Below, piece by piece: positions 50,212 to 63,999 of a stretch of DNA of 64,000 nucleotides. The stretch is taken from positions 186,001 through 250,000 of the IMG/VR virus record IMGVR_UViG_3300025133_009608; one strand, 5' to 3'. Position numbers and translations under genes: made by a program. The notes beneath the pieces are model-generated. The model had not been told where the DNA came from, did no database searches, and saw only the letters and a list, made by a program, of their open reading frames with translations. Positions within the stretch are counted from its first letter, which is position 1. The number at the start of each line of letters is the position of its first letter.

Positions 50212-52635
50212 TTACCGTCTGCGTCTCTTGTCTATGATAGAGCCGCGCTGAAGCTTGTTAAAGCCCGACTTCTTCTTCTTGATTTTTCTGTGAACCTGGT
50301 CGGCAACGGTGTTAACGTTATCCTCTTCAAGATCGAGGGTCATTGCTGCCACTCTTCCTTTTTCTTTTTGGCCGGCGACCTCTGCCTGCATTCTGCTCTC
50401 TTGTTTGAGGCTTTCAATTCGGTCCCTGGGAAGCCCGAGTCCGGCGAACCAAGAGTAAATCTTTATGGAATCGGAGTCACTCTCTATGTCGTATACTCCC
50501 TGGAATACGGAGGCTCCGTTTGTTTGCTCTGAAATCATATGAAAACAATAATTTATATTTATTGCCGGAAGCTTGTTAAGAACGCCCTCTGGGGCTGAAA
50601 TTATAACTCCACCGACCCTAGTCTGAGAGATGTCAAAGCCAGATGCCAACATATTCCCACTAAGACTCTCTATTACCGCCTCTGCTAGCGCCGTCTCCTC
50701 CATATAATCTTCAACTTCAATCATCCCATAAACAGAGCAGTCTCCGCATGAGATTATCTTTCCAAAGTCACTTGGATCCATTGAAGTATATCGAGACGGA
50801 CGAGACGTAAGTGTATTAAATACATGAAGCGGTTCAACAATTGCATTGTTAGATACGCTCCAAAAGTTATTCTGACTGAGGTTAGAATAAATTTGCTCGA
50901 TTCTCGCATTATCAGCCACAATAAGACTCGAAACCATATTGTCAGAAGTCATTCTTGCAAGTCTAGAAAGGGTTTCTATCGAGTTTCGCTTAGACCGGGC
51001 GTCCTCGGTTGCCTTCGGAAGAATGTAAATCACCCCCACTGGCATGCCGGTCTCAAATAACATCCCCACCATAGTGTCAACGCTTGAAGAGCCCGTTCCG
51101 CCGCCGCCCGATATTGCCAAATAAACCATGTGGTTTCCCGCAGCAACGTCTCCTACGAACTTATGTATATCGGACTCGTTTTCTTCAAAAATCTCTCGAC
51201 CAAGATCCAGATCCTTTCCCGTCCCACCAAGACTGCCCTCAAGAAGCAGCTTCTGAGTGGGAAGAACATCTATAAACTCCAGGTCTTGCGCGGAAGTATT
51301 AATTACTCCAACGTCATATCCTTTTTTATGCATTGTTTCTGCAATTCTCGACCCGGCCTGACCGACACCTATTACTGCTATCTCAATGCTGACAGACTGC
51401 TGAGTTATTATGCTTGGCACATCGTCCTCCATAGTTTTGCTTACCTTGGCCCTTAGAGCCTCAAGGACGTTTTCATCCAAAGAGCTTCCAGAATCTTCGG
51501 GCTGCTCTGTCGAATCATCAAAGGCGTCCATGAGTGCCTCATTTTCAGCCTCAATTTGCTTTGTTTTTTTCGTCTTCTTCTTTATCTTTACATCTTTGAC
51601 GCTAGTTTTCTTCGCTGTCATAAAATCCTCATAATAGCTCTTGAGCTGTGTTAAAATTTGATATTCGCTGGTTATCGCAAATTTTACCGGAGTTTCGTTT
51701 GCATTATACGAAATAACATCACAAAGATACTTGGAATGTTTATTCATAGGATCGGCATTCGTAGTTATTATATCACACCCCATCGCAGAGGCCTCATAGA
51801 GACTCATGCCCAGACCCTCTCGGGTTGACGGCATTAGCACACAATGAGAATTGTCATAAATACTAACCAGGTCTTTCGACACTAATATAGAATTTATTAG
51901 TATGATATTCTTACATTTTTCAGCCAGGGCCCGATCCCTATCAGAAAGAAGCCCGCTTATTGTCAGGGTTGTGCTCGCTCCAGAGTTAGTTGAGAATTTC
52001 GTATATGCCTTAATTACTTCTGTTGTATTTTTCTGACTAAACGATGGGTTTGTAGACCCGGGATGAAAAAATCTTATGCCAGAAAGGTCTTTTTTGTCTA
52101 CCTTTCGAGAAAAGGTGTCTTGATTTACGTAATTCCAGGACATTTTTTTTGCGTTTTCATATTTCCCAAAGATCTCTTTTGATGTATCTGTCAGGCACCA
52201 TATTTCATCAAACGTTCTGTATGAATTGTTATCTATATACCTCTTTATCGACCACTCCGGCATTGGTATGTCTATAATTTTCAAATTTGGGTTGCCCGTC
52301 CTGGCCCTTGTTGTCCATTGAGCCTTCGGCATGAAGGTTTCGAATGATATTATAAGATCTATATTATTTTTGGCAACAATATGTTCGATCCGAGTAGTTT
52401 GCGCGACAATTGTCAACCCGGCATGCAGATTGGCGTCGTTTGGCCGGGGGTACACCGGAGAGAATCCCGCCCGGCCATGAAGTCTTTTGAACTTTGGCTT
52501 TGCAGTATAAATAACTTTATTGTTTTTCGACAGCATGTCTCCAAGAGATTTCGCCAAATAATAAAGACCCGACTCGAATAGATACGTCTTTATTAGAATG
52601 CTCTTGTTTTTAATGTTATCTACTTCGCTATCCAT
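50212..52635 (-). CDS. In-frame fusion of a GT-B (GT4-like) glycosyltransferase and a tubulin/FtsZ-family GTPase (PhuZ/TubZ/CetZ-like), with internal RBS+ATG at 51621
   Basis: GT: PSTREGLGMSLYEA. Tubulin: GVGQAG, INTSAQDL, GGGGTGS, DPSD. Confidence 0.85.
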   Translation of the reverse strand: MDSEVDNIKNKSILIKTYLFESGLYYLAKSLGDMLSKNNKVIYTAKPKFKRLHGRAGFSPVYPRPNDANLHAGLTIVAQTTRIEHIVAKNNIDLIISFETFMPKAQWTTRARTGNPNLKIIDIPMPEWSIKRYIDNNSYRTFDEIWCLTDTSKEIFGKYENAKKMSWNYVNQDTFSRKVDKKDLSGIRFFHPGSTNPSFSQKNTTEVIKAYTKFSTNSGASTTLTISGLLSDRDRALAEKCKNIILINSILVSKDLVSIYDNSHCVLMPSTREGLGMSLYEASAMGCDIITTNADPMNKHSKYLCDVISYNANETPVKFAITSEYQILTQLKSYYEDFMTAKKTSVKDVKIKKKTKKTKQIEAENEALMDAFDDSTEQPEDSGSSLDENVLEALRAKVSKTMEDDVPSIITQQSVSIEIAVIGVGQAGSRIAETMHKKGYDVGVINTSAQDLEFIDVLPTQKLLLEGSLGGTGKDLDLGREIFEENESDIHKFVGDVAAGNHMVYLAISGGGGTGSSSVDTMVGMLFETGMPVGVIYILPKATEDARSKRNSIETLSRLARMTSDNMVSSLIVADNARIEQIYSNLSQNNFWSVSNNAIVEPLHVFNTLTSRPSRYTSMDPSDFGKIISCGDCSVYGMIEVEDYMEETALAEAVIESLSGNMLASGFDISQTRVGGVIISAPEGVLNKLPAININYCFHMISEQTNGASVFQGVYDIESDSDSIKIYSWFAGLGLPRDRIESLKQESRMQAEVAGQKEKGRVAAMTLDLEEDNVNTVADQVHRKIKKKKSGFNKLQRGSIIDKRRRR

Positions 52636-52705: not shown

Positions 52706-53650
52706 TTAAAGAGAGCCGAGAATTTCGCAATACTTAGAAAACAAAGCCTCGGATGAGAAGTTTTCAACGGCATACTCATAAGCTCCAGCCTTCAAATTTC
52801 CACGAAGCCTTTCATCTTCCATTATTTCAATTATTGCCTCAGAATAGTCCTCAATCGTCTTATTAACGATGATTCCGGTCTCATAGTTTTTGCCATGCAA
52901 ATATATTTTAGGATGAGTTACGGAGCAGACGCCAGACGCCCAACTCTCCATAAGGGTTTGGGATTTTGTTTCAGATATTGACGTACCAACGTATAAGCTG
53001 GCGCTTTTAGCTAAGTCAATATGATCAGAATATGAATATGGAGAAGGGTGCCCTATAAATTTAAAATCATATTGTGGCAAAGCCTTTTCCAACTTCAGGC
53101 CAAAGCCTATATCTTTCGCAAAATGCTTAGAGTTTCCCTTCCACATAATAAACCCAGCATCATTATCGCTAGGCTTCCACAGCTCCATCTCTGGCCCAAC
53201 AATGAGAGTCGACATTTTCCTCAAATCAAATTTATGTTCTTTCGCTATTTTATATTTCAACCTATCATTTACAGATAACACATAGTTCGGAGCAGCCATC
53301 CCAAGTAGTGTCGATTCTCTCTTTAGATCTACACAGTCCAAGACGTTTGGGCCCATTATCAACGGAGTCCCAGTATTATTTGAAATCTTTCCGGCGACTC
53401 GATAATGCCCCCCGCTGCCGCTCCAATGATGAGCATAGTCAGACCCCTCAATGCTTCTTTTTAGTCTTGCGATATCTACAATTGAGTAATAATTAATTCC
53501 ATCAAGTTTTTGCTCTACTTTTAGTGTGGTAAATATATCTATTTGAAATCGTTTATCCATTGCCTTTATAAAATTATACAGGGACATTCCGGGGCCATTT
53601 GTAAACCGCCTTGTAGCCCCTACATTGAATGCAAAAATTGTTATTTTCAT
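52706..53650 (-). CDS. GT-B (GT4-like) glycosyltransferase
   Basis: SISETKSQTLMESWASG, ETGIIV. Confidence 0.75.
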   Translation of the reverse strand: MKITIFAFNVGATRRFTNGPGMSLYNFIKAMDKRFQIDIFTTLKVEQKLDGINYYSIVDIARLKRSIEGSDYAHHWSGSGGHYRVAGKISNNTGTPLIMGPNVLDCVDLKRESTLLGMAAPNYVLSVNDRLKYKIAKEHKFDLRKMSTLIVGPEMELWKPSDNDAGFIMWKGNSKHFAKDIGFGLKLEKALPQYDFKFIGHPSPYSYSDHIDLAKSASLYVGTSISETKSQTLMESWASGVCSVTHPKIYLHGKNYETGIIVNKTIEDYSEAIIEIMEDERLRGNLKAGAYEYAVENFSSEALFSKYCEILGSL

Positions 53651-54851: not shown

Positions 54852-56969
54852 TTAAGCCAAATCAGATAGCATGGGCTCCGTGACGTCCCACTTCTCTAAA
54901 ATTTTATATAAATTAGCTATAGTTAAGCCTAAATGCTCTGCTGCTTTATTTTTATTACCATCAAACATCGACACGGCATCTTTTATATCCCTTACCGTTT
55001 TGTCCTGAAACTCTCTCCTGTATACGCTCAGTAGCTTCATTTCGAGATCCATCATATATCGATTTAAAGTTGACGAACTAATCCCAAGCTCCCTGGCCGT
55101 AGTGGTTGCAATTCCGCCATTATTAATAAGAGCTATATCAATTTTATTTCTAATCTCATCTGGAGTTAGCGATTTTGGCATATATCCTAAAATATCCACC
55201 CCGTAATATTCCAGCCGGGCGCTCAAGCCTCTATCATTTGTGCTTAGTGCCCGGGCCATTGCACTTTTATTGCCAAAATTTTCCTCCAGTATTCTTATGA
55301 ACTCCTCCCTACTGCTATCAAAATCTAAATCACGGTAGCTAATTCTACGCGCCTTTCCGCTTATTTCATATAGATCTATATTATTTCTTCTGACAACGGC
55401 TCTAATTCCACTCTCTGTTCTGTTTAGCTTTTTGGCAACAGCGTTTACGTCTCCATTTAGCTCATAAAGAGCAGCAACGACATCCTCCGCCGACACTGGC
55501 TGCTCATTATATAGAAGATCACTTTTATCAAATTTATATTTTTTCATCTTAGTGGCAAATGTGGCCGAGTGCATGTTGATCATCCGGGCCGCCTCGGCAA
55601 TTGAGTGGCTGGATTTTAGTGCATTTAAAATGCTACTCGATTCAGCGTCTTCTACTCTCTTTTTTATTTCATCAATATTTATCCCGAGCGTCCTCATCTC
55701 AATTCTAAGCGTTATTCCGGGCCTTTTTATTTTTCTTGATGTCTCTTTTACATTCCCATTGTTAGCAATCAGCGTGTCAATAATAATCTTCTTTCTCTCT
55801 TCGTCTTTTTTTGTATCCCTGTAATCTTCCGGGTTTAGCCCAAACTTATCCGCATAATGCGCTAAGCTCTGGTACTTCACTCCCATCAACTTGGCGGCAA
55901 GAACTCGGTCTCCATTTGCCTCTACTAAAAACTTTTCTATCTCTGTTATCTTTCTCCTCTCTTCTGCCGCTCGCTCTTTTTCTCTTTCCTCTTTGATGAT
56001 GTTTTTTGCATCAGAGATTTTACTACCAAAATCTGGATGTGCCTCTTCAAATATGTCGATGACTTTTCCCTTTAGCCACCAGGCCGCATCTATAACTTCC
56101 AAATCGGCAGCCTCCATGGAGTCCATATAATTTATGATTTCAAATTCTGGTTTAGACTTTATTTTGTCAGAATAGTAACTATTACTCGCACCAGAGGGAT
56201 ACGGAGAATGGGGATCGCTCTTCAGTATGTTGCACCTATTTCCGCCGCGAGCATGGTCTTTTCCATATTTTTCTTCAACATCTTTATATATCGAAACCTC
56301 AACTCCCAAGAATCGCCTTCTAAAGGACTCCTTGGACTCGCCATCGCTCCTCTCTATGGGCTCTAGGTGGACCATTTCTATCGGCTTATGGAGCGTAGTC
56401 CAGGCTGCGCCACATCGAATATGAGAATTGCCCTCGGTATAATCCGCTGACATCTGATTTGGACCGCCGCCCGCCGCGGGACCATCAGAATTGGGGGAAA
56501 AAATATCACTTAAGCGCATCTTTCTGCTCATAAATTTTTCTACCGCGCCCTTGTCGAATGGCTCGGTATATAATTTTTTTATGGTATCAAGCCCGGCGGA
56601 CGTTACATATAGACGGCCGATTTTGTGCTGTAAGAGCCGCGTGATGGGATTCTTTGCCTCTCCGACATACCAGTTGTATATCGGCAGGCCCGTTAGTGCG
56701 TCGACCACTTGTTTTCCGTCAACTTTGTTTTCTAATTTTAATACATATATGTAGTGAACGCCATCTTGCAGCGGCCCCATTGCTGAAACCTCCTGCCCCG
56801 GCCCTATCCCTAGGTGTGGGATCGGAACTCTGCCGCGCGCGCTCTTTGATATTAGATGACTATAGTCGCAGTTATATGGCATGAGCTCGCCGACGGCGGC
56901 AGCGGCGTCTTTCAGCCCCATGTCCTCCAATATGCCTCGTAATAGTGGGATTTTATTAAATCCTTTCAT
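54852..56969 (-). CDS. GIY-YIG nuclease with seven tandem Fis-type HTH domains and N-terminal tag
   Basis: YIYVLKLE..WYVGE...RLLQH..GAAWT.LHKP..YG...RGG; repeated L...GN...AA..LG.....L... Confidence 0.75.
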   Translation of the reverse strand: MKGFNKIPLLRGILEDMGLKDAAAAVGELMPYNCDYSHLISKSARGRVPIPHLGIGPGQEVSAMGPLQDGVHYIYVLKLENKVDGKQVVDALTGLPIYNWYVGEAKNPITRLLQHKIGRLYVTSAGLDTIKKLYTEPFDKGAVEKFMSRKMRLSDIFSPNSDGPAAGGGPNQMSADYTEGNSHIRCGAAWTTLHKPIEMVHLEPIERSDGESKESFRRRFLGVEVSIYKDVEEKYGKDHARGGNRCNILKSDPHSPYPSGASNSYYSDKIKSKPEFEIINYMDSMEAADLEVIDAAWWLKGKVIDIFEEAHPDFGSKISDAKNIIKEEREKERAAEERRKITEIEKFLVEANGDRVLAAKLMGVKYQSLAHYADKFGLNPEDYRDTKKDEERKKIIIDTLIANNGNVKETSRKIKRPGITLRIEMRTLGINIDEIKKRVEDAESSSILNALKSSHSIAEAARMINMHSATFATKMKKYKFDKSDLLYNEQPVSAEDVVAALYELNGDVNAVAKKLNRTESGIRAVVRRNNIDLYEISGKARRISYRDLDFDSSREEFIRILEENFGNKSAMARALSTNDRGLSARLEYYGVDILGYMPKSLTPDEIRNKIDIALINNGGIATTTARELGISSSTLNRYMMDLEMKLLSVYRREFQDKTVRDIKDAVSMFDGNKNKAAEHLGLTIANLYKILEKWDVTEPMLSDLA

Positions 56970-57009
56970 AGTAATAGGTCTCAAATTATTAGTAAGGATT
57001 TAGAATTCA

Positions 57010-57336
57010 TTAAAATGATACACTCTCGCCGCAACCGCAAGTTCTATCTGCCTTTGGGTTGTTGAATACCAGGCCAGATTTCAAAAGGTCTTCTTCGTAG
57101 TCAATTTCCACTCCATTTAAGAATAAATAAGACTTCATATCAATACAAACTTTGACACCGTTGAACTCAAACACCTTATCCCTCTCTTCGGGCTGGTCTA
57201 TGAATTCATATTTGTACATATAGCCAGAGCAGCCGCCGCCCTGAAGTTTTATTCTAAGATAGTTATCTGGTGTTTGCCGCTTCATTAGAAGCGATCTTAC
57301 CTTGTCCTGCGCAGGTTGTGTCATTGTAATTGCCAT
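57010..57336 (-). CDS. iscA: IscA/HesB Fe-S carrier
   Basis: GGGCSG, CGCGESVSF. Confidence 0.92.
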   Translation of the reverse strand: MAITMTQPAQDKVRSLLMKRQTPDNYLRIKLQGGGCSGYMYKYEFIDQPEERDKVFEFNGVKVCIDMKSYLFLNGVEIDYEEDLLKSGLVFNNPKADRTCGCGESVSF

Positions 57337-57347
57337 TTTGTGCCAAC

Positions 57348-57611
57348 CTAGTAGTATGGGTTTGTGCCAGAAAGGTGATCGGTAACATCCTCAATCTCGC
57401 CGATATCTGGAAACACTTCTCTAAAATGTCTTTGGACTCCAAGCATCATAGTTATTTTTGATGATGCGCACCCATGACACCCTCCACCCATTATTATTTT
57501 AAGTGAATTGTCACTTTCATTGAATTCATGAATGGAAATGTTTCCTCCGTGCATTTCTAAGCCAGAATTTATATCTTCATCTATGATTTTCTGTATCTCT
57601 TCTTTATTCAT
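57348..57611 (-). CDS. Nfu/NifU C-terminal domain protein
   Basis: L..HGG, GGCHGC..S..T. Confidence 0.85.
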   Translation of the reverse strand: MNKEEIQKIIDEDINSGLEMHGGNISIHEFNESDNSLKIIMGGGCHGCASSKITMMLGVQRHFREVFPDIGEIEDVTDHLSGTNPYY

Positions 57612-57996
57612 TCTCTATCCCACGTTTTTTCTTCCAATCACTGATTGCAGCCTTGATGGCATCTTCTGCAAGGACAGAGCAGTGAATTTTGACCGGCGGC
57701 AATGAGAGCTCTCTCGCAATATGGGAATTGGAAATAGCCTCCGCCTCATCGGTGGTCCTTCCGATGACCATGGTGGTCGCCAGTGAGCTAGAGGCCACGG
57801 CTGAGCCACACCCAAATGTCTTGAATTTTGCGTCCTCGATGATACCGTTGTCATTAATCTTGAGTTGCAGTTTCATCAAATCGCCGCAGGCTGGCGCGCC
57901 TACCATGCCAGTACCAACATTCGGATCAGACTTATCTAAGCTGCCCATGTTTCTTGGACTGTCAAAGTGATCCATTACCTTGTCTGAATATGCCAT
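57604..57996 (-). CDS. iscU: Fe-S scaffold IscU
   Basis: PRNMG, APACGD, FGCGSA, LPPVKIHCS. Confidence 0.95.
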   Translation of the reverse strand: MAYSDKVMDHFDSPRNMGSLDKSDPNVGTGMVGAPACGDLMKLQLKINDNGIIEDAKFKTFGCGSAVASSSLATTMVIGRTTDEAEAISNSHIARELSLPPVKIHCSVLAEDAIKAAISDWKKKRGIENE

Positions 57997-58019: not shown

Positions 58020-59003
58020 TTATTGGCCAATTGCGCTCAGCATTTCCAGGTCGTTCTCATACATCTCTTTTAATAGCGCCTTCCAGTCATATTCTGGGTC
58101 CCAGCCGAGCTTCTCTCGAGCCTTGCTCGCGTCTCCTAGTAGGTATGGGACATCTGACGGTCTCAGAAATCTTTTATCCAACTCATATACTTCTTCAAAC
58201 TCCAGGCCGGCGAGATAACAAACGTACCTGAGCATTTCTCCTATTGTTGCTCCCGATCCTGTGGCTATGACGTAATTTTCCGGAGCTTCTTGCTGTAGCA
58301 TCAGCCACATCGCTTTTACATAGTCCTTGCTGCAGCCTTCATCTCTAAATGCGGACAGGTCGCCCATTTTCAACGTATCTTGAAGCCCCAACTTAACGGA
58401 AGCAACTCCGTGAGTTATCTTTCGAGCTGCAAAGCTCACGCCTCGGCGCAGAGAAGAGTGATTGAACAAAATTCCAGAAACGGCGAACAACCCATAAGCT
58501 TCTCGGTAATTATTTACGGACAGGTGAGCCGCACACTTAGAAATAGCGTAGGGAGAGCGGGGATTGAGGGGAGAGTTCTCGTTATACCCCTCCCTTGGGC
58601 AGTCAACTCCCCCTAGCATTTCGCTCGTGGAGGCTTGATAATAGCGAGTGGCCGGAGAGTAGTCTTTCAGCAAAGAAAGATGCATTATCACGGCTTCTGC
58701 GTTTACCTGAAATACCTTTACCGGATTCACAAAGCTGTAACCAACATGACTGGCGGCCCCTAGGTTGTAAAACTCATGAGGCTGTACGTCATGGATCAAC
58801 CGGCCGATAAAAATGGGATCAGAAAGGTCTCCCTCGGTGTAGTGGAAGTTTTCATCATCCATTAGATGAGCTATGTTCTCCGTTCCAGAATTAACGCTCT
58901 TGCGAATACTAACTCCAAATACCTCATACCCCTTACTTAGCAGAAATTCTGCCAAATATGAACCATCCTGTCCCGCCGTGCCTGTTATTATTGCCCTAAG
59001 CAT
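58020..59003 (-). CDS. gmd: GDP-mannose 4,6-dehydratase
   Basis: TGTAGQDGSYL, YQASTSE, PRSPYAISK, LRPSDV. Confidence 0.92.
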   Translation of the reverse strand: MLRAIITGTAGQDGSYLAEFLLSKGYEVFGVSIRKSVNSGTENIAHLMDDENFHYTEGDLSDPIFIGRLIHDVQPHEFYNLGAASHVGYSFVNPVKVFQVNAEAVIMHLSLLKDYSPATRYYQASTSEMLGGVDCPREGYNENSPLNPRSPYAISKCAAHLSVNNYREAYGLFAVSGILFNHSSLRRGVSFAARKITHGVASVKLGLQDTLKMGDLSAFRDEGCSKDYVKAMWLMLQQEAPENYVIATGSGATIGEMLRYVCYLAGLEFEEVYELDKRFLRPSDVPYLLGDASKAREKLGWDPEYDWKALLKEMYENDLEMLSAIGQ

Positions 59004-59086: not shown

Positions 59087-59638
59087 CTATTTTTCCAAAA
59101 TAACACTACCCGCCGAAGGTAGGTCATACAGCCTAACCTCTCCGCCTTTTGCTCCAAGGCTCCCGAACCCCCCGCCGCCGGGCTCAAGGCCTCCATCCTC
59201 CTCCGGGCCCATAGCTCCGGTAACCGGTCTCCCCGATTTTATTATTTCTTGTATTTCCATAATTGTTTCGTGCATATCTTCGGAATAAAACGGCAACCTA
59301 TAAGATCTTGGATCTGATAACTGCCGGCGTCGAAAAAACTCATAAGAATCATCCAACTCTCCATCGGCTTCGCTTATCCATAAAAATATTGCCCCCGGCT
59401 CTCCAGACGCCTTATTTGGACTTCTTGCCAGGGCCCAGTGTATTAAAAATTTATCTGGCAACCCGACCTCGGCGGGCCATCCGGCCAAGTTCTCTAAAGA
59501 TCGGGCGATATTGAGCGAAAACAAGACCGTAGCCGTTATCGCAACAAGCTTAGCCCACCACCTACCGCTTGATCCGATAACAAACCATAACAATATTGAC
59601 GCAAGGACTATAAATATCAAAGAAACCTCTATCACCAT
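59087..59638 (-). CDS. Membrane protein (2 TM plus soluble domain), third gene of the MotA/ExbB triad
   Basis: Hydrophobic N-terminus; coupled to the upstream gene. Confidence 0.6.
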   Translation of the reverse strand: MVIEVSLIFIVLASILLWFVIGSSGRWWAKLVAITATVLFSLNIARSLENLAGWPAEVGLPDKFLIHWALARSPNKASGEPGAIFLWISEADGELDDSYEFFRRRQLSDPRSYRLPFYSEDMHETIMEIQEIIKSGRPVTGAMGPEEDGGLEPGGGGFGSLGAKGGEVRLYDLPSAGSVILEK

Positions 59639-60219
59639 CCGATCCCTGTAAAATACTTTGGAATACTATTCGTCCCAATTACCCGTCCTTCTCGATCCAA
59701 TATAAACCTACAGGCAGTCTCTTCTTGCCCGCTGTACCTCATTAACAGGGTTCTTGAAGAAACTGTTCCAAATGGATTTATTTTATCTATTGTAACCAGG
59801 ACTGGAGTTTCTCCTTCGGTTCTTTTGATGTAAGCATGGATATTTACAACATATTCTCCCGGCATCATTCCCCTGATCATAACGATCTCCCTGTTATCGC
59901 TATTATCTATTGATTCTGATATCGAGGAGGAGTAGGGATCAACTCCAAGGTCATCTCGATCTAAATGCATCATTCCCGCCTCCTGGTTTCTAAAGAACAC
60001 AACATTGCCCTCTGGGTCTTCGACATAAATGTCTATATCATCGTTTCTGTCACCCGGCCATGATGCTGTGATTATAAACTCGGCCCTCACGTCTATTTCG
60101 CTTGACTCTTTTTCTGGACTTACAATTAACAGCGCAATTGCGAATAGAGCAACAAAGCACAGAAGCGTATTAAATAAAATATCAAGAAATGCCAAGTTTG
60201 AATGGTATGACCTTCCCAC
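59632..60219 (-). CDS. Single-TM MotB/ExbD-like partner with periplasmic beta domain
   Basis: AFLDILF (TM Asp); DIDIYV.DP, LDRDDLG, GEYVVNIH. Confidence 0.6.
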   Translation of the reverse strand: MGRSYHSNLAFLDILFNTLLCFVALFAIALLIVSPEKESSEIDVRAEFIITASWPGDRNDDIDIYVEDPEGNVVFFRNQEAGMMHLDRDDLGVDPYSSSISESIDNSDNREIVMIRGMMPGEYVVNIHAYIKRTEGETPVLVTIDKINPFGTVSSRTLLMRYSGQEETACRFILDREGRVIGTNSIPKYFTGIGW

Positions 60220-60678
60220 TTATTTCGCCTCAGAGTCGTCGATATTAAAGCATTGAACTTTTAACAGGGCACTGCTTATGAGGCCAGTAAGAGTTGTATA
60301 TAGCGCCGTTGACATTCCAACTCCTAGTTCTGTAATCAAATCCTGAATTGTACTTATATCTTCTATATTTATGCCAGCAAACCCACTAAGCATTTCTATA
60401 AAACCTATAACAGTTCCAATCATTCCTATTGTGAGAACCAGATCGCTCATAAACCATCCAAATTCTATATTCGGGGTCAGACCTCGATCGATCTGCCATG
60501 ATTTATGCCCACACCACACGGACGTAACAATTAAAACGAGTAAGTTTACAAAGCTCAGCTTGGTAAAGTCACTATCCCAAAGAGCCTCTCCCAGGCCCAT
60601 ATAGAGTCCCTGGGTTATCGCCCCGAGCATGAGCGAAAAAAACAACCACCAGGTTAAAAATGTTTTATATTTATTCAC
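60220..60678 (-). CDS. MotA/TolQ/ExbB proton-channel family protein
   Basis: IGMIGTVIG and GMSTALYTTLTGL. Confidence 0.85.
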   Translation of the reverse strand: MNKYKTFLTWWLFFSLMLGAITQGLYMGLGEALWDSDFTKLSFVNLLVLIVTSVWCGHKSWQIDRGLTPNIEFGWFMSDLVLTIGMIGTVIGFIEMLSGFAGINIEDISTIQDLITELGVGMSTALYTTLTGLISSALLKVQCFNIDDSEAK

Positions 60679-63600
60679 TCAGCGCCCCTGCTTGGTAACG
60701 CTCGAAAGCCACCGGGCGCGAGCTGTCCGCCCATTAGGAGCAAGCCCACTATAGTCATCGATCTTATCCAGACCGAGCTCAAAAAAGTAGTAACCACCTT
60801 TTGCCTCTGCTAATCGACTGGCTGCAGAAATTGCGAAATCTGCATCACCGTATATTTCGTGTATTTTGCTATCAAAAAATTCATAAGGAGAGGCCTTCGC
60901 CAGAGACTCCGCAGCCTCCATTGTCAAGTGTCCGTATTCATCCGATTCGTGAAATTTTAGATCAAAAAAGATTCGAGGGCCTAATTCTATCATCCCCTTC
61001 ATGGCAATCGGTATTCTGTCTTTGTACTTATCTATTTTGTAAAGATCACTTCCAAAGAATACCCACGGAAAGCTCTCTATTATCCTGTCTATTGCGACTT
61101 CCGCAAGAACCTCGTACCTTTCATCGGCTGCCGTATCGGGGCCCTCCTCGAAAAAGGCCCATGGGTATTTCCCTGTAGCCAAGGCCTCCGCTGCGGCGAG
61201 CCCAAATTCCGAATATTCCGCCATCATGTGAAGGTTGAGCTTAAAAAATTCATCTGGATTTTTTTCGGATAAAGCTTTCGCGGCGGGCAGGGCTGCTGCC
61301 GCGTATATATCACTTGGGCCCTGCTTATGTATTTCTAATTGAAAATAAGAATATGGACGTGACTCTACCATGCATTTTACAAATTTCTTATTTAATACTT
61401 CAAATCTTGGGTCATTAAATCGGCCATTTAATAACTTTAAGTATTTTTCATAATCACTACATACATATCTCTTGGCCATCCTGATGGCTATCGTGATAAA
61501 CTCCTCGACGGTGTGTAGTCCGTTATCTGTAAAGTCAGAGAAGCTATCCGAGTTATTTTTCGCCAAGGTTGCATCAAGTGTGTGCATCGTGTTATTTGTC
61601 AGCAACTCTTTTAGATTAACATTGGTCGCGTACTCTCCTAAGGCCTTAATTGCTTGTCCTTTTTTGTAATAATCATTTTGATTCTCCATATTATATATCA
61701 CGTATCTATCCAAAAAGACTCTTGCAGACTCCTTTAGCCCTTCATCATCAAATACTTCATTAGGAAGGTTTTCCATCATATCTTGAATCATATACCCATC
61801 TGGGACGCCAAAGCCTTCGATTCTCGCATCCGAATTAAAGGCGTCAATCCATACCTTCATCCGTTCCCGAATAAATTCTATAGTTTTATATTTTTCAACC
61901 GGGAGAATCACCAACGCCCTCCATTCCAGATGGGATCCAAGAGATGTTTCTATTAGCATTTCTCGCAACTCCTCTGTTTCTAGCAAATCAAAGATCCCCA
62001 GAACCTCTTCTTCCGATATATGCTCGGAATGTAGGACGTATGAGCTCACAGCTTTCGAGATAAGCACATCTGGCAGGTGATTGTCCTTATTCGCCCTCAT
62101 AACCTTCTCAAATCCGTAACTTCGTTCGTCGATCATTATTGTTTCAATATTTTTAGCAAGAAACCTCAAAGCAATTGGGGATAGCGCAGACATCCCAAGT
62201 ACGGAAAAGAAAACACTACTGAGATTGTACTCTTTACCTTTCTCTTCCATATTGCTCAAAACACCGTCGACCAAGTTATGCTCCTCTCGACCGGCTAGGA
62301 CTGCTATAACTTCATCCGGAGACCATAGGGCTCCGGAGTAATAATTATCCATTATCTTTTCAGTCTCGGCAATCATCCAATAATCGTCTGAATCTTCATA
62401 ATCTATTGGAGCAAAATACTCATCCAGCCAATTACGAATATATGGTGCATACTTCTGTACCGGAGGGGCGTTTTCCTTTCCCTTTATTTGATGCACATTT
62501 CTGCCCGATGAGCCTCCCACCTCTATTGTCACGTGAGGCTCATTCTTGGCGTCTCTTAGAGAATAGATCTTAAGGCGCCCAATGATGATGTCATCGCAAT
62601 AGCCCCCAACGCAGTGCCCCATGTTGCGACCCTCGGTTTCGACATCCTCGGGCGGGACAAGAACCATCGTGTATCCGTCCCCAAAATCATGATGAACATT
62701 TTTTGTATTATATTCGCCAACTTCAATAGCCGGAACAAACTGCTCGTGCCACTTTTCGGCAGCCTGGATCATGGTCTGCGCGGAAATACTCTGCCATGGG
62801 CCCATTCCCGGCTCAGGGAACGCATCCAGAGAGTTCACATAATCCTTAATTTGAATTAAAACCAGCCGTGGCGATGCCGCTTCATTCATATTAATGTTCG
62901 CCAGCCACTTAATAAATGGCTTTCTATTCTTATGGGGCAACAGGTCATCACCGACGAGGGCAATGGCATTTAATGCCGATCTATTAAAAATTGGTCCATC
63001 CTCTGCCCTCTCGGAAAGGCTCTCAAAATAAGATCGAGGATCTTGCTCCGGGCTCTTTGCGATCTGCTTTTGCAATGACTTTATATTAATCTTTTTTAGA
63101 TACTCCTTATCTGCCTGTGCGGCAACCTTGTGCAGCTTTTCTATCTGGCCCATCCGGCCTCTTTCGCTTTCGCAAGCTCTAATTATTGATATATCTTTTG
63201 CCTCTTTCTTGAAGCCATTACTCCGAAGCCATTTCGACAGCCTATCTAGAGCATAATCAGGCTCATCTGGCCACTCATCCGGATCGAACTCAGACCACTG
63301 CTCATTTAGCGAAATATATTTAGATGGTATGTGACCATTGATAATTATTGTATCGTGATCAACTCCGTCATTAGCCGCCTCAGAATCAGAATACTCCACC
63401 CCCAGAGCCCAGGCTATGGAGTTTATCATTTTTTCTCTATAAATAGCCGGCTCCATCTCTATAACAGGGAGCTCTTCATTCTTTTGCTCATAATCTTTGC
63501 GCATCGCGCTTAAATCTATTTCAAATATATAGTCGCCATAAGAGTCAATTGCTTCTGGATTGAAGCTTGCGAAAATAGCACTTCCAACCCAGCGATTTGA

Positions 63601-63999
63601 AAGCCCCCTCGTCTTGCTCATTGGAGATAGCCCTTCTCGCATAATTGATTTAACATTCTCTCCTGGAGTTGCGTGATAGGCTATTCCGGCAAAGTAATCC
63701 TCCTGATAATTCTCCTCGTCAACGTAGTCTTCTGGGGAAATGTTATAAATCCAATGATTCGCGTCTTCGGAGCCGCTTATATTTTCACCGTCCATGTCAG
63801 CAACATGTTTGTCGCCCCGCCAGCCAAATGCATAAATTTTACTCAGGCCCTCTTTTTCGTTCGTAAGATCTATAACTTCCGTGGATCCACCGTCCTTATT
63901 TATAAGCTCAGAAAACCTACTCCAATTAAGCGCCTCATACCCCCCTATCACGTCCTCAAGGATCCCGAGCTCTTCCTCGGTCAAGCCTTCTGGTTTCAT
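60679..63999 (-). CDS. Large polyvalent protein: ADP-ribosyltransferase-like domain, internal tag, PcfJ-like domain and helical repeats (may extend beyond the window)
   Basis: YHAT...SIMREGL...IFAS...IP; EGRNMGHCVGGY..YSLRD..PHVTIE..QIKG..N; about 30-aa repeats at the C-terminus. Confidence 0.65.
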   Translation of the reverse strand: MKPEGLTEEELGILEDVIGGYEALNWSRFSELINKDGGSTEVIDLTNEKEGLSKIYAFGWRGDKHVADMDGENISGSEDANHWIYNISPEDYVDEENYQEDYFAGIAYHATPGENVKSIMREGLSPMSKTRGLSNRWVGSAIFASFNPEAIDSYGDYIFEIDLSAMRKDYEQKNEELPVIEMEPAIYREKMINSIAWALGVEYSDSEAANDGVDHDTIIINGHIPSKYISLNEQWSEFDPDEWPDEPDYALDRLSKWLRSNGFKKEAKDISIIRACESERGRMGQIEKLHKVAAQADKEYLKKINIKSLQKQIAKSPEQDPRSYFESLSERAEDGPIFNRSALNAIALVGDDLLPHKNRKPFIKWLANINMNEAASPRLVLIQIKDYVNSLDAFPEPGMGPWQSISAQTMIQAAEKWHEQFVPAIEVGEYNTKNVHHDFGDGYTMVLVPPEDVETEGRNMGHCVGGYCDDIIIGRLKIYSLRDAKNEPHVTIEVGGSSGRNVHQIKGKENAPPVQKYAPYIRNWLDEYFAPIDYEDSDDYWMIAETEKIMDNYYSGALWSPDEVIAVLAGREEHNLVDGVLSNMEEKGKEYNLSSVFFSVLGMSALSPIALRFLAKNIETIMIDERSYGFEKVMRANKDNHLPDVLISKAVSSYVLHSEHISEEEVLGIFDLLETEELREMLIETSLGSHLEWRALVILPVEKYKTIEFIRERMKVWIDAFNSDARIEGFGVPDGYMIQDMMENLPNEVFDDEGLKESARVFLDRYVIYNMENQNDYYKKGQAIKALGEYATNVNLKELLTNNTMHTLDATLAKNNSDSFSDFTDNGLHTVEEFITIAIRMAKRYVCSDYEKYLKLLNGRFNDPRFEVLNKKFVKCMVESRPYSYFQLEIHKQGPSDIYAAAALPAAKALSEKNPDEFFKLNLHMMAEYSEFGLAAAEALATGKYPWAFFEEGPDTAADERYEVLAEVAIDRIIESFPWVFFGSDLYKIDKYKDRIPIAMKGMIELGPRIFFDLKFHESDEYGHLTMEAAESLAKASPYEFFDSKIHEIYGDADFAISAASRLAEAKGGYYFFELGLDKIDDYSGLAPNGRTARARWLSSVTKQGR

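What the first reader, a model, noticed from the sequence alone, without database searches (positions are those of the whole stretch)
59087..60678. Three-gene ion-driven motor module (MotA/ExbB-like, Asp-TM partner, membrane protein)
Seen: a minimal MotA/TolQ/ExbB protein, a coupled single-TM protein with the Asp (AFLDILF) but no OmpA-like PG-binding domain, and a third coupled 2-TM protein. Established: such 5:2 complexes power flagellar stators, Ton/Tol, AglRQS gliding and Zorya. Inference: an uncharacterised phage-encoded PMF-coupled machine for superinfection exclusion, depolarisation or motility hijack.
Basis: partly seen in the sequence, partly recalled or inferred. Interest (0 to 1): 0.6.

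Follow-up and report, generated by a model that had tools for sequence, protein, structure and literature searches.

The report
Phage-borne minimal MotA/ExbB-type motor module
A marine jumbo phage carries three tightly coupled membrane-protein genes that look like a stripped-down ion-driven Tol/Ton/flagellar-stator type motor. The same trio is conserved in many unrelated phages and, in a fuller four-gene form, in proteobacterial chromosomes, and no paper found in the library searches describes it.

Summary
Window 59087-60678 (- strand) holds three abutting or overlapping genes.

- **A** (152 aa) is a MotA/TolQ/ExbB-family protein scoring above Pfam's threshold. It keeps the pore-lining Thr residues but has almost no cytoplasmic domain.
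- **B** (195 aa) has one TM helix with an Asp that is invariant in phages, followed by a TerD-fold beta-sandwich. That domain is neither OmpA-like nor ExbD/TolR-like.
- **C** (183 aa) has an N-out 2-TM hairpin and a small periplasmic domain with no known fold match.

The A-B-C order recurs in every one of 43 IMG/VR loci that has enough DNA. It was checked in three of the 29 Rhizobium/Sinorhizobium phage records. It also recurs in most of 80 bacterial loci. There A is longer, a fourth gene D (DUF3108-like lipoprotein) often follows, and PQQ-alcohol-dehydrogenase/Ped-type ABC genes are frequent neighbours. In the B tree, phage and cellular sequences separate on one branch.

In one phage clade C is fused to a GH24 lysozyme, which supports a periplasmic C-terminus and hints at the cell wall as target.

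My best reading is a new family of MotAB/ExbBD-type ion-driven module with a periplasm-directed output, kept by phages for a purpose of their own. A 5:2 assembly could not be modelled with these tools.

The parts
60220..60678 (-). Gene A: minimal MotA/TolQ/ExbB-family channel subunit, 152 aa. It has four hydrophobic segments and only a ~13-16 residue cytoplasmic loop between the second and third.
   Evidence: PF01618 scores 35.2 bits against GA 22.9. The family profile hits PomA/MotA/TolQ chains at E about 1e-5, ExbB at 1e-2 and ZorA at 0.1-0.6. The motifs 'GxxGTxxGF' (T89) and 'AxxTTxxG' (T128/T129) are kept in 40-41 of 43 phage copies. Cellular homologues have a 60-80 aa cytoplasmic insert that phage copies lack.
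59632..60219 (-). Gene B: axle-like subunit, 195 aa. It is one TM helix carrying Asp13, followed by a periplasmic beta-sandwich.
   Evidence: AF2 model pLDDT is 86.9. There is no Pfam or NCBIfam family. 1768 protein clusters match at E<=1e-3.
60121..60195 (-). B transmembrane helix (residues 9-33) with the conserved Asp13 (codon 60183-60181).
   Evidence: The helix spans 9-33 in the model. Asp13 is present in 46/46 phage and 72/80 cellular sequences. The other 8 cellular sequences have an Asp one helical turn earlier.
59644..60087 (-). B periplasmic domain (residues ~45-192): TerD-fold beta-sandwich with invariant acidic motifs (D61, D63, 'LDRDDxG' at 86-92, E111).
   Evidence: VIA-align gives Z 10.2 (rmsd 3.5, 128 residues) to TerD homologue 2qz7_B and Z 9.4 to K. 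pneumoniae TerD 2kxt; the next hit is 6.3. Foldseek gives E 2e-4 to 1e-3 for TerD-like entries. Invariance is shown.
59087..59638 (-). Gene C: 183-aa inner-membrane protein. It has an N-out 2-TM hairpin (residues 2-50, 59489-59635) followed by a periplasmic alpha/beta domain (residues 51-183).
   Evidence: AF2 model pLDDT is 80. The loop between the helices carries R/K. Conserved features are 'GWP' after TM2, 'PRxY', and a C-terminal '[YF][DE][LM]P...P.K' motif. Fusion to PF00959 lysozyme in L024-L027, L029 and L040 supports a periplasmic C-terminus. There is no PDB fold match.

Best explanation
The three genes encode a stripped-down member of the MotAB/ExbBD/TolQR superfamily of ion-driven membrane motors. 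The phage makes it and inserts it into the host inner membrane during infection.

**Proposed mechanism**
- A forms the channel-bearing ring. By homology this would be a pentamer.
- Two copies of B sit in the ring's centre. Their TM Asp13 faces the conserved Thr residues of A, so ion flow (H+ or Na+) drives movement of A relative to B.
- A has essentially no cytoplasmic domain, so the work must be delivered on the periplasmic side.
- The delivery would go through B's membrane-proximal TerD-fold domain (probably cation-binding) and through C.
- I infer that C docks on the complex the way TonB and TolA dock on ExbB and TolQ.

**Likely target and purpose**
- The most specific clue to the target is the cell wall. 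In one phage clade, C carries an apparently catalytically competent GH24 lysozyme at its periplasmic end.
- I therefore favour a PMF-coupled device that positions, restrains or activates envelope- or peptidoglycan-directed activity during infection, for example the timing of lysis.

**Shown**
- Gene structure and translational coupling.
- Family membership of A.
- Conservation of the Asp and Thr residues.
- The TerD fold of B.
- The topology clues for C.
- Universal A-B-C linkage.
- A separate phage branch in the B tree.

**Inferred**
- 5:2 stoichiometry.
- Ion conduction.
- Physical binding of C.
- The target and the purpose.
For: - A is a bona fide MotA_ExbB protein. It retains the two pore-lining Thr motifs.
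- B's TM Asp is present in 46/46 phage copies.
- The genes abut or overlap.
- The A-B-C order holds in all 43 IMG/VR loci with sufficient DNA and in the three cultured rhizobiophage records examined (RHph_I1_9 and RL38J1, both ~155-kb Pootjesviridae, and the 68-kb RHph_N3_13).
- Nothing else is conserved around the trio, so it is a self-contained unit.
- Phage A lacks the cytoplasmic insert of cellular A.
- B's periplasmic domain has a TerD fold with invariant acidic motifs.
- C's periplasmic orientation fits the positive-inside rule. It also fits the C::lysozyme fusions, PF00959 at 167 bits in 6 of 43 loci, with clusters of 86 and 47 members elsewhere.
- Phage B sequences are separated from 76 cellular ones by a single supported branch (97, FastTree). 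Phage copies have also lost D. Both argue for a phage-specific role rather than a recent host-gene pickup.
Against: - There is no direct evidence of assembly, stoichiometry, ion flux or expression. No RNA run holds the stretch.
- C's docking on A or B is an analogy only.
- The lysozyme fusion is confined to one clade.
- In T4-like rhizobiophages the module sits among replication and early-middle genes (topoisomerase, gp55-like sigma, gp46/47), not in a lysis cassette.
- Cellular homologues are linked to PQQ-dehydrogenase/Ped ABC clusters and an outer-membrane-type lipoprotein, not to cell-wall genes.
- In the AF2 model, C's conserved C-terminal motif folds back onto its own domain at low confidence. 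It may therefore be structural rather than a partner-binding arm.
- The tree is FastTree-only and unrooted, with long phage branches.
Confidence: 0.5

Rival explanations
1. Auxiliary copy of a host pathway. The phage genes simply replace or boost the host's own A-B-C(-D) system during infection. In cells that system appears tied to periplasmic PQQ-dependent alcohol dehydrogenase and Ped-type (lanthanide-associated) ABC transport. This would sustain host energy metabolism or metal supply.
For: - B is 38-49% identical to cellular B, with every conserved residue retained.
- Cellular modules lie within 5 kb of PQQ-ADH (TIGR03075) or Ped-type ABC genes (TIGR03861, TIGR03864, TIGR03866) in about 48 of 80 loci from alpha-, beta- and gammaproteobacteria.
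- The window phage carries other metabolic genes: Fe-S assembly, RNR and GDP-mannose dehydratase.
Against: - Phage B forms one ancient branch outside all sampled cellular B, rather than nesting inside host clades as recent auxiliary genes usually do.
- Phages never carry D and have deleted A's cytoplasmic domain.
- Marine alphaproteobacterial loci show no PQQ linkage, so the cellular role itself is unsettled.
Confidence: 0.15
2. Regulated ion leak. The A-B channel is used to depolarise or bleed the host PMF at a set time, for host shut-off or as a pinholin-like lysis trigger. B's TerD-fold domain or C would act as the plug or gate. No mechanical output is needed.
For: - The ion-path residues are conserved.
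- A has no cytoplasmic partner domain, and B lacks the plug helix and peptidoglycan-binding domain that gate MotB.
- By established knowledge, unplugged MotAB leaks protons and arrests growth.
- The link of C to a lysozyme fits PMF-triggered lysis.
Against: - The same architecture is stably kept in bacterial chromosomes in housekeeping contexts. A dedicated depolariser would be harmful there.
- A 3-gene system is elaborate for a leak.
- No holin-like features were seen.
Confidence: 0.15
3. Exclusion or counter-defence by interference. The phage subunits mix with or block host 5:2 machines (Tol, Ton, or a Zorya-type defence). This would stop superinfecting phages or colicins that need Tol/Ton, or disarm a motor-based defence.
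For: - A is roughly equidistant from TolQ, PomA/MotA and ExbB, and weakly similar to ZorA.
- In rhizobiophages the module sits among genes expressed before late genes.
- By established knowledge, many phages and colicins depend on Tol/Ton.
Against: - Intact cellular orthologous operons exist, and B and C are strongly conserved with their own periplasmic domains. That argues for an autonomous machine, not a poison subunit.
- The ZorA similarity is limited to the TM core (27 bits or less, 67-96 residues).
- No experiment or genomic association supports exclusion.
Confidence: 0.1

Closest known systems
Tol-Pal (TolQ-TolR-TolA, with TolB and Pal) and Ton (ExbB-ExbD-TonB) systems
   Same: - The gene order is the same: channel subunit, then Asp-bearing single-TM subunit, then a third inner-membrane protein with a periplasmic domain.
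- The A profile matches TolQ at E about 5e-5 and ExbB at 1e-2.
- The output is presumably periplasmic.
- The cellular version adds a lipoprotein (D), much as Tol has Pal.
   Different: - B's periplasmic domain has a TerD fold, not the TolR/ExbD fold.
- C has two TM helices and no TonB or TolA domain.
- A lacks the cytoplasmic domain and has an extra N-terminal hydrophobic segment.
- D is DUF3108-like, not OmpA-like.
Flagellar stator MotAB / PomAB
   Same: - These are the best profile hits for A: PomA 1.3e-5 and MotA 1.4e-5.
- A has four hydrophobic segments.
- The Asp in B's TM and the Thr residues in A's last two TMs are conserved.
   Different: - There is no cytoplasmic torque-generating domain (a ~13-16 residue loop only).
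- B has no plug helix and no OmpA-like peptidoglycan-binding domain.
- No flagellar genes are nearby.
Zorya ZorAB anti-phage motor
   Same: - It is a MotA/ExbB-type core.
- There are weak PADLOC and NCBIfam ZorA hits over the TM core.
- It is a phage-related context.
   Different: - A ends 8 residues after its last TM, so it has no long ZorA tail.
- B has no ZorB-type peptidoglycan-binding domain.
- The three proteins give no ZorC or ZorD match, and the immediate neighbours are a PcfJ-like protein and a GDP-mannose dehydratase.
- The module is carried by the phage, not the host.
TerD-family proteins (tellurite-resistance TerD/TerE/TerZ)
   Same: B residues ~45-192 adopt the TerD beta-sandwich (Z 10.2 and 9.4). 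They carry invariant Asp-rich motifs, reminiscent of TerD's calcium sites. The entry title of 2kxt states calcium binding.
   Different: - There is no sequence-level match to Pfam TerD.
- TerD proteins are soluble and cytoplasmic, whereas here the domain is periplasmic and tethered to a motor-type TM helix.
- Metal binding was not tested.
Phage-encoded 'ExbB' reported as a putative auxiliary gene (eLife 2024, PMC11361711)
   Same: It is a MotA/ExbB-family gene annotated in phage genomes.
   Different: That report is annotation-level only, with a single gene interpreted as a Ton energiser for polysaccharide uptake. It describes no B or C partners, no conserved module and no cellular operon.

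Membership tests
MotA/TolQ/ExbB superfamily (5:2 ion-driven motors), A subunit | Sequence match to the MotA_ExbB channel domain above the curated threshold | tested here: met
   PF01618 scores 35.2 bits against GA 22.9. The family profile hits PomA, MotA and TolQ at E about 1e-5.
MotA/TolQ/ExbB superfamily (5:2 ion-driven motors), A subunit | Conserved polar (Thr) residues in the last two TM helices lining the ion path | tested here: met
   T89 is kept in 41/43 phage copies, and T128 and T129 in 40/43 each. These residues align with 'GTLVG' and 'ALLTT' of PomA.
MotA/TolQ/ExbB superfamily (5:2 ion-driven motors), B subunit | Adjacent gene for a single-TM protein with a conserved Asp in the helix | tested here: met
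   Asp13 lies within helix 9-33. It is present in 46/46 phage and 72/80 cellular sequences. The gene abuts A.
MotA/TolQ/ExbB superfamily (5:2 ion-driven motors) | A5:B2 stoichiometry with the B dimer inside the A pentamer | not testable with these tools
   Complex prediction allows at most 4 copies of a chain and 6 chains in total. No assembly evidence was obtained.
MotA/TolQ/ExbB superfamily (5:2 ion-driven motors) | Ion flux coupled to work | not testable with these tools
   This needs membrane-potential assays and mutants.
Ton system (ExbB-ExbD-TonB) | ExbD-type periplasmic domain in the B subunit, and a TonB protein (Pro-rich linker plus TonB C-terminal domain) | tested here: not met
   B has no Pfam ExbD hit and C has no TonB_C hit at E<=1. 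B's domain has a TerD fold. C has no fold match.
Tol-Pal system | TolR-type domain, TolA, TolB and the OmpA-like lipoprotein Pal | tested here: not met
   None of these is detected in the three proteins. The phage genome has no D-like lipoprotein either. Cellular D is DUF3108-like.
Flagellar stator MotAB/PomAB | Large cytoplasmic domain of A that contacts FliG, plus the plug and OmpA-like peptidoglycan-binding domain of B | tested here: not met
   The cytoplasmic loop is ~13-16 residues. There is no OmpA or MotB_plug Pfam hit. B is a beta-sandwich starting 13 residues after the TM.
Zorya (ZorABCD/ZorABE) | ZorA with a long C-terminal tail, ZorB with a peptidoglycan-binding domain, and ZorC/D or ZorE effectors | tested here: not met
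   PADLOC ZorA hits cover only 67-96 residues of the TM core at 27 bits or less, and there is no ZorB, ZorC or ZorD hit. A is 152 aa in total.
TerD family | TerD beta-sandwich fold | tested here: met
   Z 10.2 (2qz7_B, 128 residues, rmsd 3.5) and Z 9.4 (2kxt), well above the next hit at 6.3.
TerD family | Sequence membership (Pfam TerD) and calcium binding | tested here: inconclusive
   There is no Pfam TerD hit at E<=1. Invariant acidic motifs are present, but metal binding cannot be tested here.

The most novel reading that the evidence does not exclude
A-B-C may be a previously unrecognised class of 5:2-type motor. Its axle carries a cation-binding TerD-fold domain and its third subunit C is the force or signal output.

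In phages it would be a PMF-gated device that controls a cell-wall hydrolase, and so lysis or envelope remodelling. The C::lysozyme fusions would be the self-contained form.

In bacteria, with lipoprotein D, the same motor would energise an outer-envelope step of the PQQ-dehydrogenase / lanthanide-calcium supply system.
Probability: 0.2. Interest if true: 0.85.

Novelty: new variant of a known kind. Interest (0 to 1): 0.62.

Why it matters
Ion-driven 5:2 motors (flagellar stators, Ton, Tol, gliding/T9SS, Zorya) are a small set of machines, and each known output was a major discovery.

This would add a widespread family with three unusual properties:
- a B subunit of new architecture (a TerD fold instead of a peptidoglycan-binding or ExbD-type domain);
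- an obligatory new third subunit;
- a naturally minimised A of about 150 aa with no cytoplasmic domain, which is attractive for structural and mechanistic work.

It is also, as far as the searched literature shows, the first conserved motor module of this kind carried by phages themselves. It spans jumbo, T4-like and 68-kb phages. That raises a concrete question about what a virus does with host PMF in the periplasm.

Cultured Rhizobium phages and non-pathogenic hosts carry the module, so it can be tested directly.

The cellular operon's linkage to PQQ-dehydrogenase/Ped clusters offers a second, independent line of enquiry.

Tried and rejected
- **Complex prediction.** It counts neither for nor against binding.
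- **Fold of C.** Foldseek against the PDB gave nothing at E<=1e-3, only weak OB-like rows. VIA wide was swamped by matches to the helical hairpin. The Atlas and BFVD searches returned only unnamed homologues and the lysozyme-fusion cluster.
- **Sequence profile of B against PDB sequences.** Only weak 'DxDxxVxxPxG' beta-jelly-roll matches came back.
- **Zorya membership.** Rejected.
- **Word search with the C profile.** It was cut to 8000 candidates and found only 18 proteins, so it says little about family size.
- **Literature.** Seven searches found no description of this module.
- **Expression.** Only marine DNA runs hold the stretch, and no RNA run does.
- **D in phages.** No D homologue is in the viral loci or in the whole 316-kb genome.
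- **First tree attempt.** It was lost to a machine error. The tree used is FastTree only.
- **Not run.** The large representative search was not run, because relatives were already plentiful.
Full report
**1. What is in the window**

The window is bases 186001-250000 of a 316,664-bp IMG/VR virus record that CheckV rates 94% complete. Its genes lie almost entirely on the - strand. They include phage families and replication genes: phrog_13226 at 480 bits, phrog_22605 at 458 bits, RNR, a DNA helicase and a tRNA nucleotidyltransferase. Near-identical DNA occurs in marine metagenome runs, and no RNA run holds it.

At 59087-60678 there are three - strand ORFs:
- A: 60678..60220, 152 aa
- B: 60219..59632, 195 aa
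- C: 59638..59087, 183 aa

The junctions are TGA|GTG (upstream 1106-aa ORF to A), TAA|GTG (A to B) and an ATGGTGA overlap (B to C). Each start has a purine-rich stretch upstream. This layout is typical of translationally coupled subunits. No convincing promoter or terminator lies inside the block.

**2. The three proteins**

*A* matches Pfam MotA_ExbB above its gathering score, 35.2 against 22.9 bits.
- A profile built from 33 family members hits PomA, MotA and TolQ chains at E about 1e-5. It hits ExbB at 1e-2 and ZorA only at 0.1-0.6.
- PADLOC and NCBIfam ZorA hits cover only the TM core.
- A has four hydrophobic segments. The loop between the second and third is about 13-16 residues. The profile alignment places the conserved 'GxxGTxxGF' and 'AxxTTxxG' motifs against the corresponding PomA/MotA helices.
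- T89, T128 and T129 are kept in 40-41 of 43 phage copies.

*B* has no Pfam, NCBIfam or PADLOC family.
- Its AF2 model (pLDDT 86.9) is one TM helix (residues 9-33) containing Asp13. A 13-residue linker follows, then an all-beta sandwich.
- The sandwich has a TerD fold. The matches are Z 10.2 to 2qz7_B (128 residues, rmsd 3.5) and Z 9.4 to K. pneumoniae TerD 2kxt, against 6.3 for the next hit. Foldseek agrees.
- Asp13 is present in 46/46 phage sequences. The periplasmic residues W54, D61, D63, L86, D89, D90, G92 and E111 are invariant in all 126 sequences compared.
It is also not ExbD/TolR-like.

*C* has no family in any library.
- Its model (pLDDT 80) has a TM hairpin (2-22 and 27-50) and a small alpha/beta domain. 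That domain has no significant PDB match.
- The inter-helix loop carries R/K and the N-terminus is only a few residues long. This predicts an N-out/C-out topology.

**3. Conservation and linkage**

- B finds 29 Rhizobium/Sinorhizobium phage records by tblastn. In the three I opened, a ~145-aa MotA_ExbB-like gene precedes it and a ~150-aa 2-TM gene follows. These are two ~155-kb Pootjesviridae and one 68-kb phage.
- A pattern scan of IMG/VR gave 43 loci. A is directly upstream wherever upstream DNA exists. A 144-301-aa 2-TM ORF is directly downstream wherever DNA exists. This includes loci where my first C profile had missed it.
- Clustering the neighbours shows that only A, B and C are shared across these loci. 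The next most common neighbours are ClpP (17 loci) and an SbmA/BacA-like transporter (12 loci).
- B has 1768 90%-identity clusters at E<=1e-3 in the large protein collection. Almost all are unnamed.

**4. A cellular counterpart**

- The same scan of one genome per prokaryotic species found at least 185 contigs. The 80 kept come from Burkholderiales (Ideonella, Rubrivivax, Sphaerotilus), Devosia, Hyphomicrobium, Xanthobacteraceae, marine uncultured Alphaproteobacteria and several Gammaproteobacteria. Identity to the window's B is 38-49%.
- A-B-C order holds in most of them.
- Cellular A is longer, 210-261 aa by gene calls, because it has a 60-80-aa cytoplasmic insert and a C-terminal extension.
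- In 53 of 80 loci a fourth gene, D, follows C. D is DUF3108-like and has a lipoprotein signal, with lipobox LIGC or LSAC.
- The surrounding genes are chromosomal housekeeping or metabolic genes, not prophage genes.
- In about 48 of 80 loci, spread over three proteobacterial classes, a PQQ-dependent methanol/ethanol-family dehydrogenase lies within 5 kb, or the 'PQQ-dependent alcohol dehydrogenase system' ABC transporter, beta-propeller and binding protein do. The latter match TIGR03861, TIGR03864 and TIGR03866 above their cut-offs.
- NCBI names A 'MotA/TolQ/ExbB proton channel family protein' and names B, C and D 'hypothetical'. UniRef's automatic names are ExbD, DUF4131 and DUF3108.
- The phage genome has a single copy of A, B and C and no D. 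No viral locus has D.

**5. Phage versus cell**

A FastTree of 116 B sequences puts all 76 cellular rows on one side of a branch (support 97) and all 40 phage rows on the other. The phage branches are longer and more diverse. The tree is unrooted and approximate, and only the cellular sequences closest to the query were sampled.

Even so, the pattern is not that of repeated recent captures of host genes. Combined with the loss of D and of A's cytoplasmic domain, it points to a long-standing phage-adapted version of the module.

**6. A functional clue**

In six of the 43 viral loci (L024-L027, L029, L040), C continues into a complete GH24 lysozyme domain. The Pfam match is PF00959 at 167 bits, residues 166-289 of the L026 protein. 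The usual Glu...Asp...Thr motif context is visible in the alignment.

Independent collections hold clusters of 86 and 47 such fusion proteins. This supports a periplasmic C-terminus for C. By the fusion ('Rosetta stone') argument, it links the module to the cell wall.

**7. Mechanism**

From established knowledge of MotAB, ExbBD and TolQR, five A subunits surround two B helices. Protonation and deprotonation of the B Asp, facing Thr residues of A, drives rotation of A around B. The defining sequence features for that core are all present here (section 2).

Two things differ.
- Phage A has nothing in the cytoplasm to push against, so any output must be periplasmic.
- B cannot reach peptidoglycan. 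Its compact TerD-fold domain starts 13 residues above the membrane, and it carries invariant acidic clusters that suggest cation binding.

C is the only candidate adaptor. I infer that it docks on the A ring or on B's domain as TonB and TolA do, and that it couples the motor to a periplasmic target. That target could be peptidoglycan or a hydrolase in phages, and lipoprotein D in cells.

I rate the core claim, a MotAB/ExbBD-type ion-driven complex with an obligatory third subunit, at about 0.75. I rate the peptidoglycan/lysis-directed purpose at about 0.35-0.4. The overall statement is 0.5.

Three rivals are given with their tests: an auxiliary copy of the host pathway, a regulated ion leak, and interference with host motors or defences. 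Motility hijack is unlikely because A has no torque-generating domain.

**8. Comparison with known systems**

The module works most like Tol/Ton, given its gene order, periplasmic output and third inner-membrane subunit. It fails their membership tests, because it has no ExbD/TolR fold and no TonB, TolA, TolB or Pal. It also fails those of flagellar stators and Zorya (see the membership table).

It is a member of the MotA/TolQ/ExbB superfamily at the level of A and of the Asp-bearing B helix. The TerD-fold B, the C family and the minimised A make it a new variant of that kind, not a new kind.

Seven literature searches found no description of it. The nearest item is an annotation-level mention of a phage 'ExbB' as a putative auxiliary gene. 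A 2025 survey of MotAB relatives notes many uncharacterised 'generic ion transporters' with unknown appendages, but does not describe this family or any phage copies.

**9. Limits**

- There is no evidence of expression, assembly, stoichiometry or ion flux.
- The single complex-prediction job gave no answer and is not used as evidence.
- C's fold search was done on the whole model.
- The cellular PQQ linkage is genomic association only.

Noticed in passing
L048-L127 (bacterial loci), e.g. L128:3696-9841, L131:1162-8248: The cellular A-B-C(-D) operon lies within 5 kb of a PQQ-dependent methanol/ethanol-family dehydrogenase and/or the Ped-type 'PQQ-dependent alcohol dehydrogenase system' ABC transporter, beta-propeller and binding protein. 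This holds in about 48 of 80 loci from alpha-, beta- and gammaproteobacteria. Together with B's acidic TerD-fold domain, it suggests a role in Ca/lanthanide or quinoprotein supply.
   Followed up: partly
L024:735-1622, L025:4212-5117, L026:2982-3869, L027:1604-2509, L029:4679-5578, L040:4688-5587: In one phage clade, the C protein is fused at its C-terminus to a full GH24 phage lysozyme domain (PF00959, 167 bits). Clusters of 86 and 47 such proteins exist elsewhere.
   Followed up: partly
L011:5451-6419, L037:4618-5595, L010:5846-6433: Twelve viral loci have an SbmA/BacA-like inner-membrane transporter gene (PF05992, over 430 bits) just downstream of the module. Seventeen have a ClpP protease gene nearby.
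   Followed up: no
window 57010-57996 (- strand): The phage encodes three consecutive Fe-S cluster assembly genes: IscA/HesB-like (PF01521), a NifU C-terminal-like domain (PF01106) and IscU/NifU_N (PF01592, 170 bits).
   Followed up: partly
window 50212-52635 (- strand): An 807-aa ORF combines a group-1 glycosyltransferase domain (residues 200-298) with a Tubulin/FtsZ GTPase domain (residues 418-583, 54 bits against GA 33). This is an unusual fusion for a jumbo-phage tubulin.
   Followed up: no
window 58020-59003 and 52706-53650 (- strand): GDP-mannose 4,6-dehydratase (PF16363, 323 bits) sits immediately downstream of the module, and a further glycosyltransferase is nearby. This suggests phage-directed sugar or surface modification.
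   Followed up: no
window 54852-56984 (- strand): A 710-aa protein appears to be built largely of repeated Fis-type HTH motifs (PF02954 plus other HTH families).
   Followed up: no
window 60679-63999 (- strand): A 1106-aa ORF with a PcfJ-like domain (PF14284, residues 450-516) ends in a TGA that directly abuts the GTG start of gene A. It may therefore be co-transcribed with the module.
   Followed up: no
L056, L059, L091, L096, L102, L103, L108, L115; and L090, L098, L104, L118, L122, L125, L126: One cellular clade has no Asp at the usual TM position of B, but has one a helical turn earlier ('FDPF..VMLFK'). Another clade has Lys in place of the pore Thr89 of A. These may be natural variants of the ion path.
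   Followed up: no
L058, L069, L070, L074, L078 (e.g. L074:4938-5558): In 'Rhizobium sp. Q54'-type MAGs, a B homologue stands alone between guaB-like and rlmE-like genes, with no A or C next to it.
   Followed up: partly
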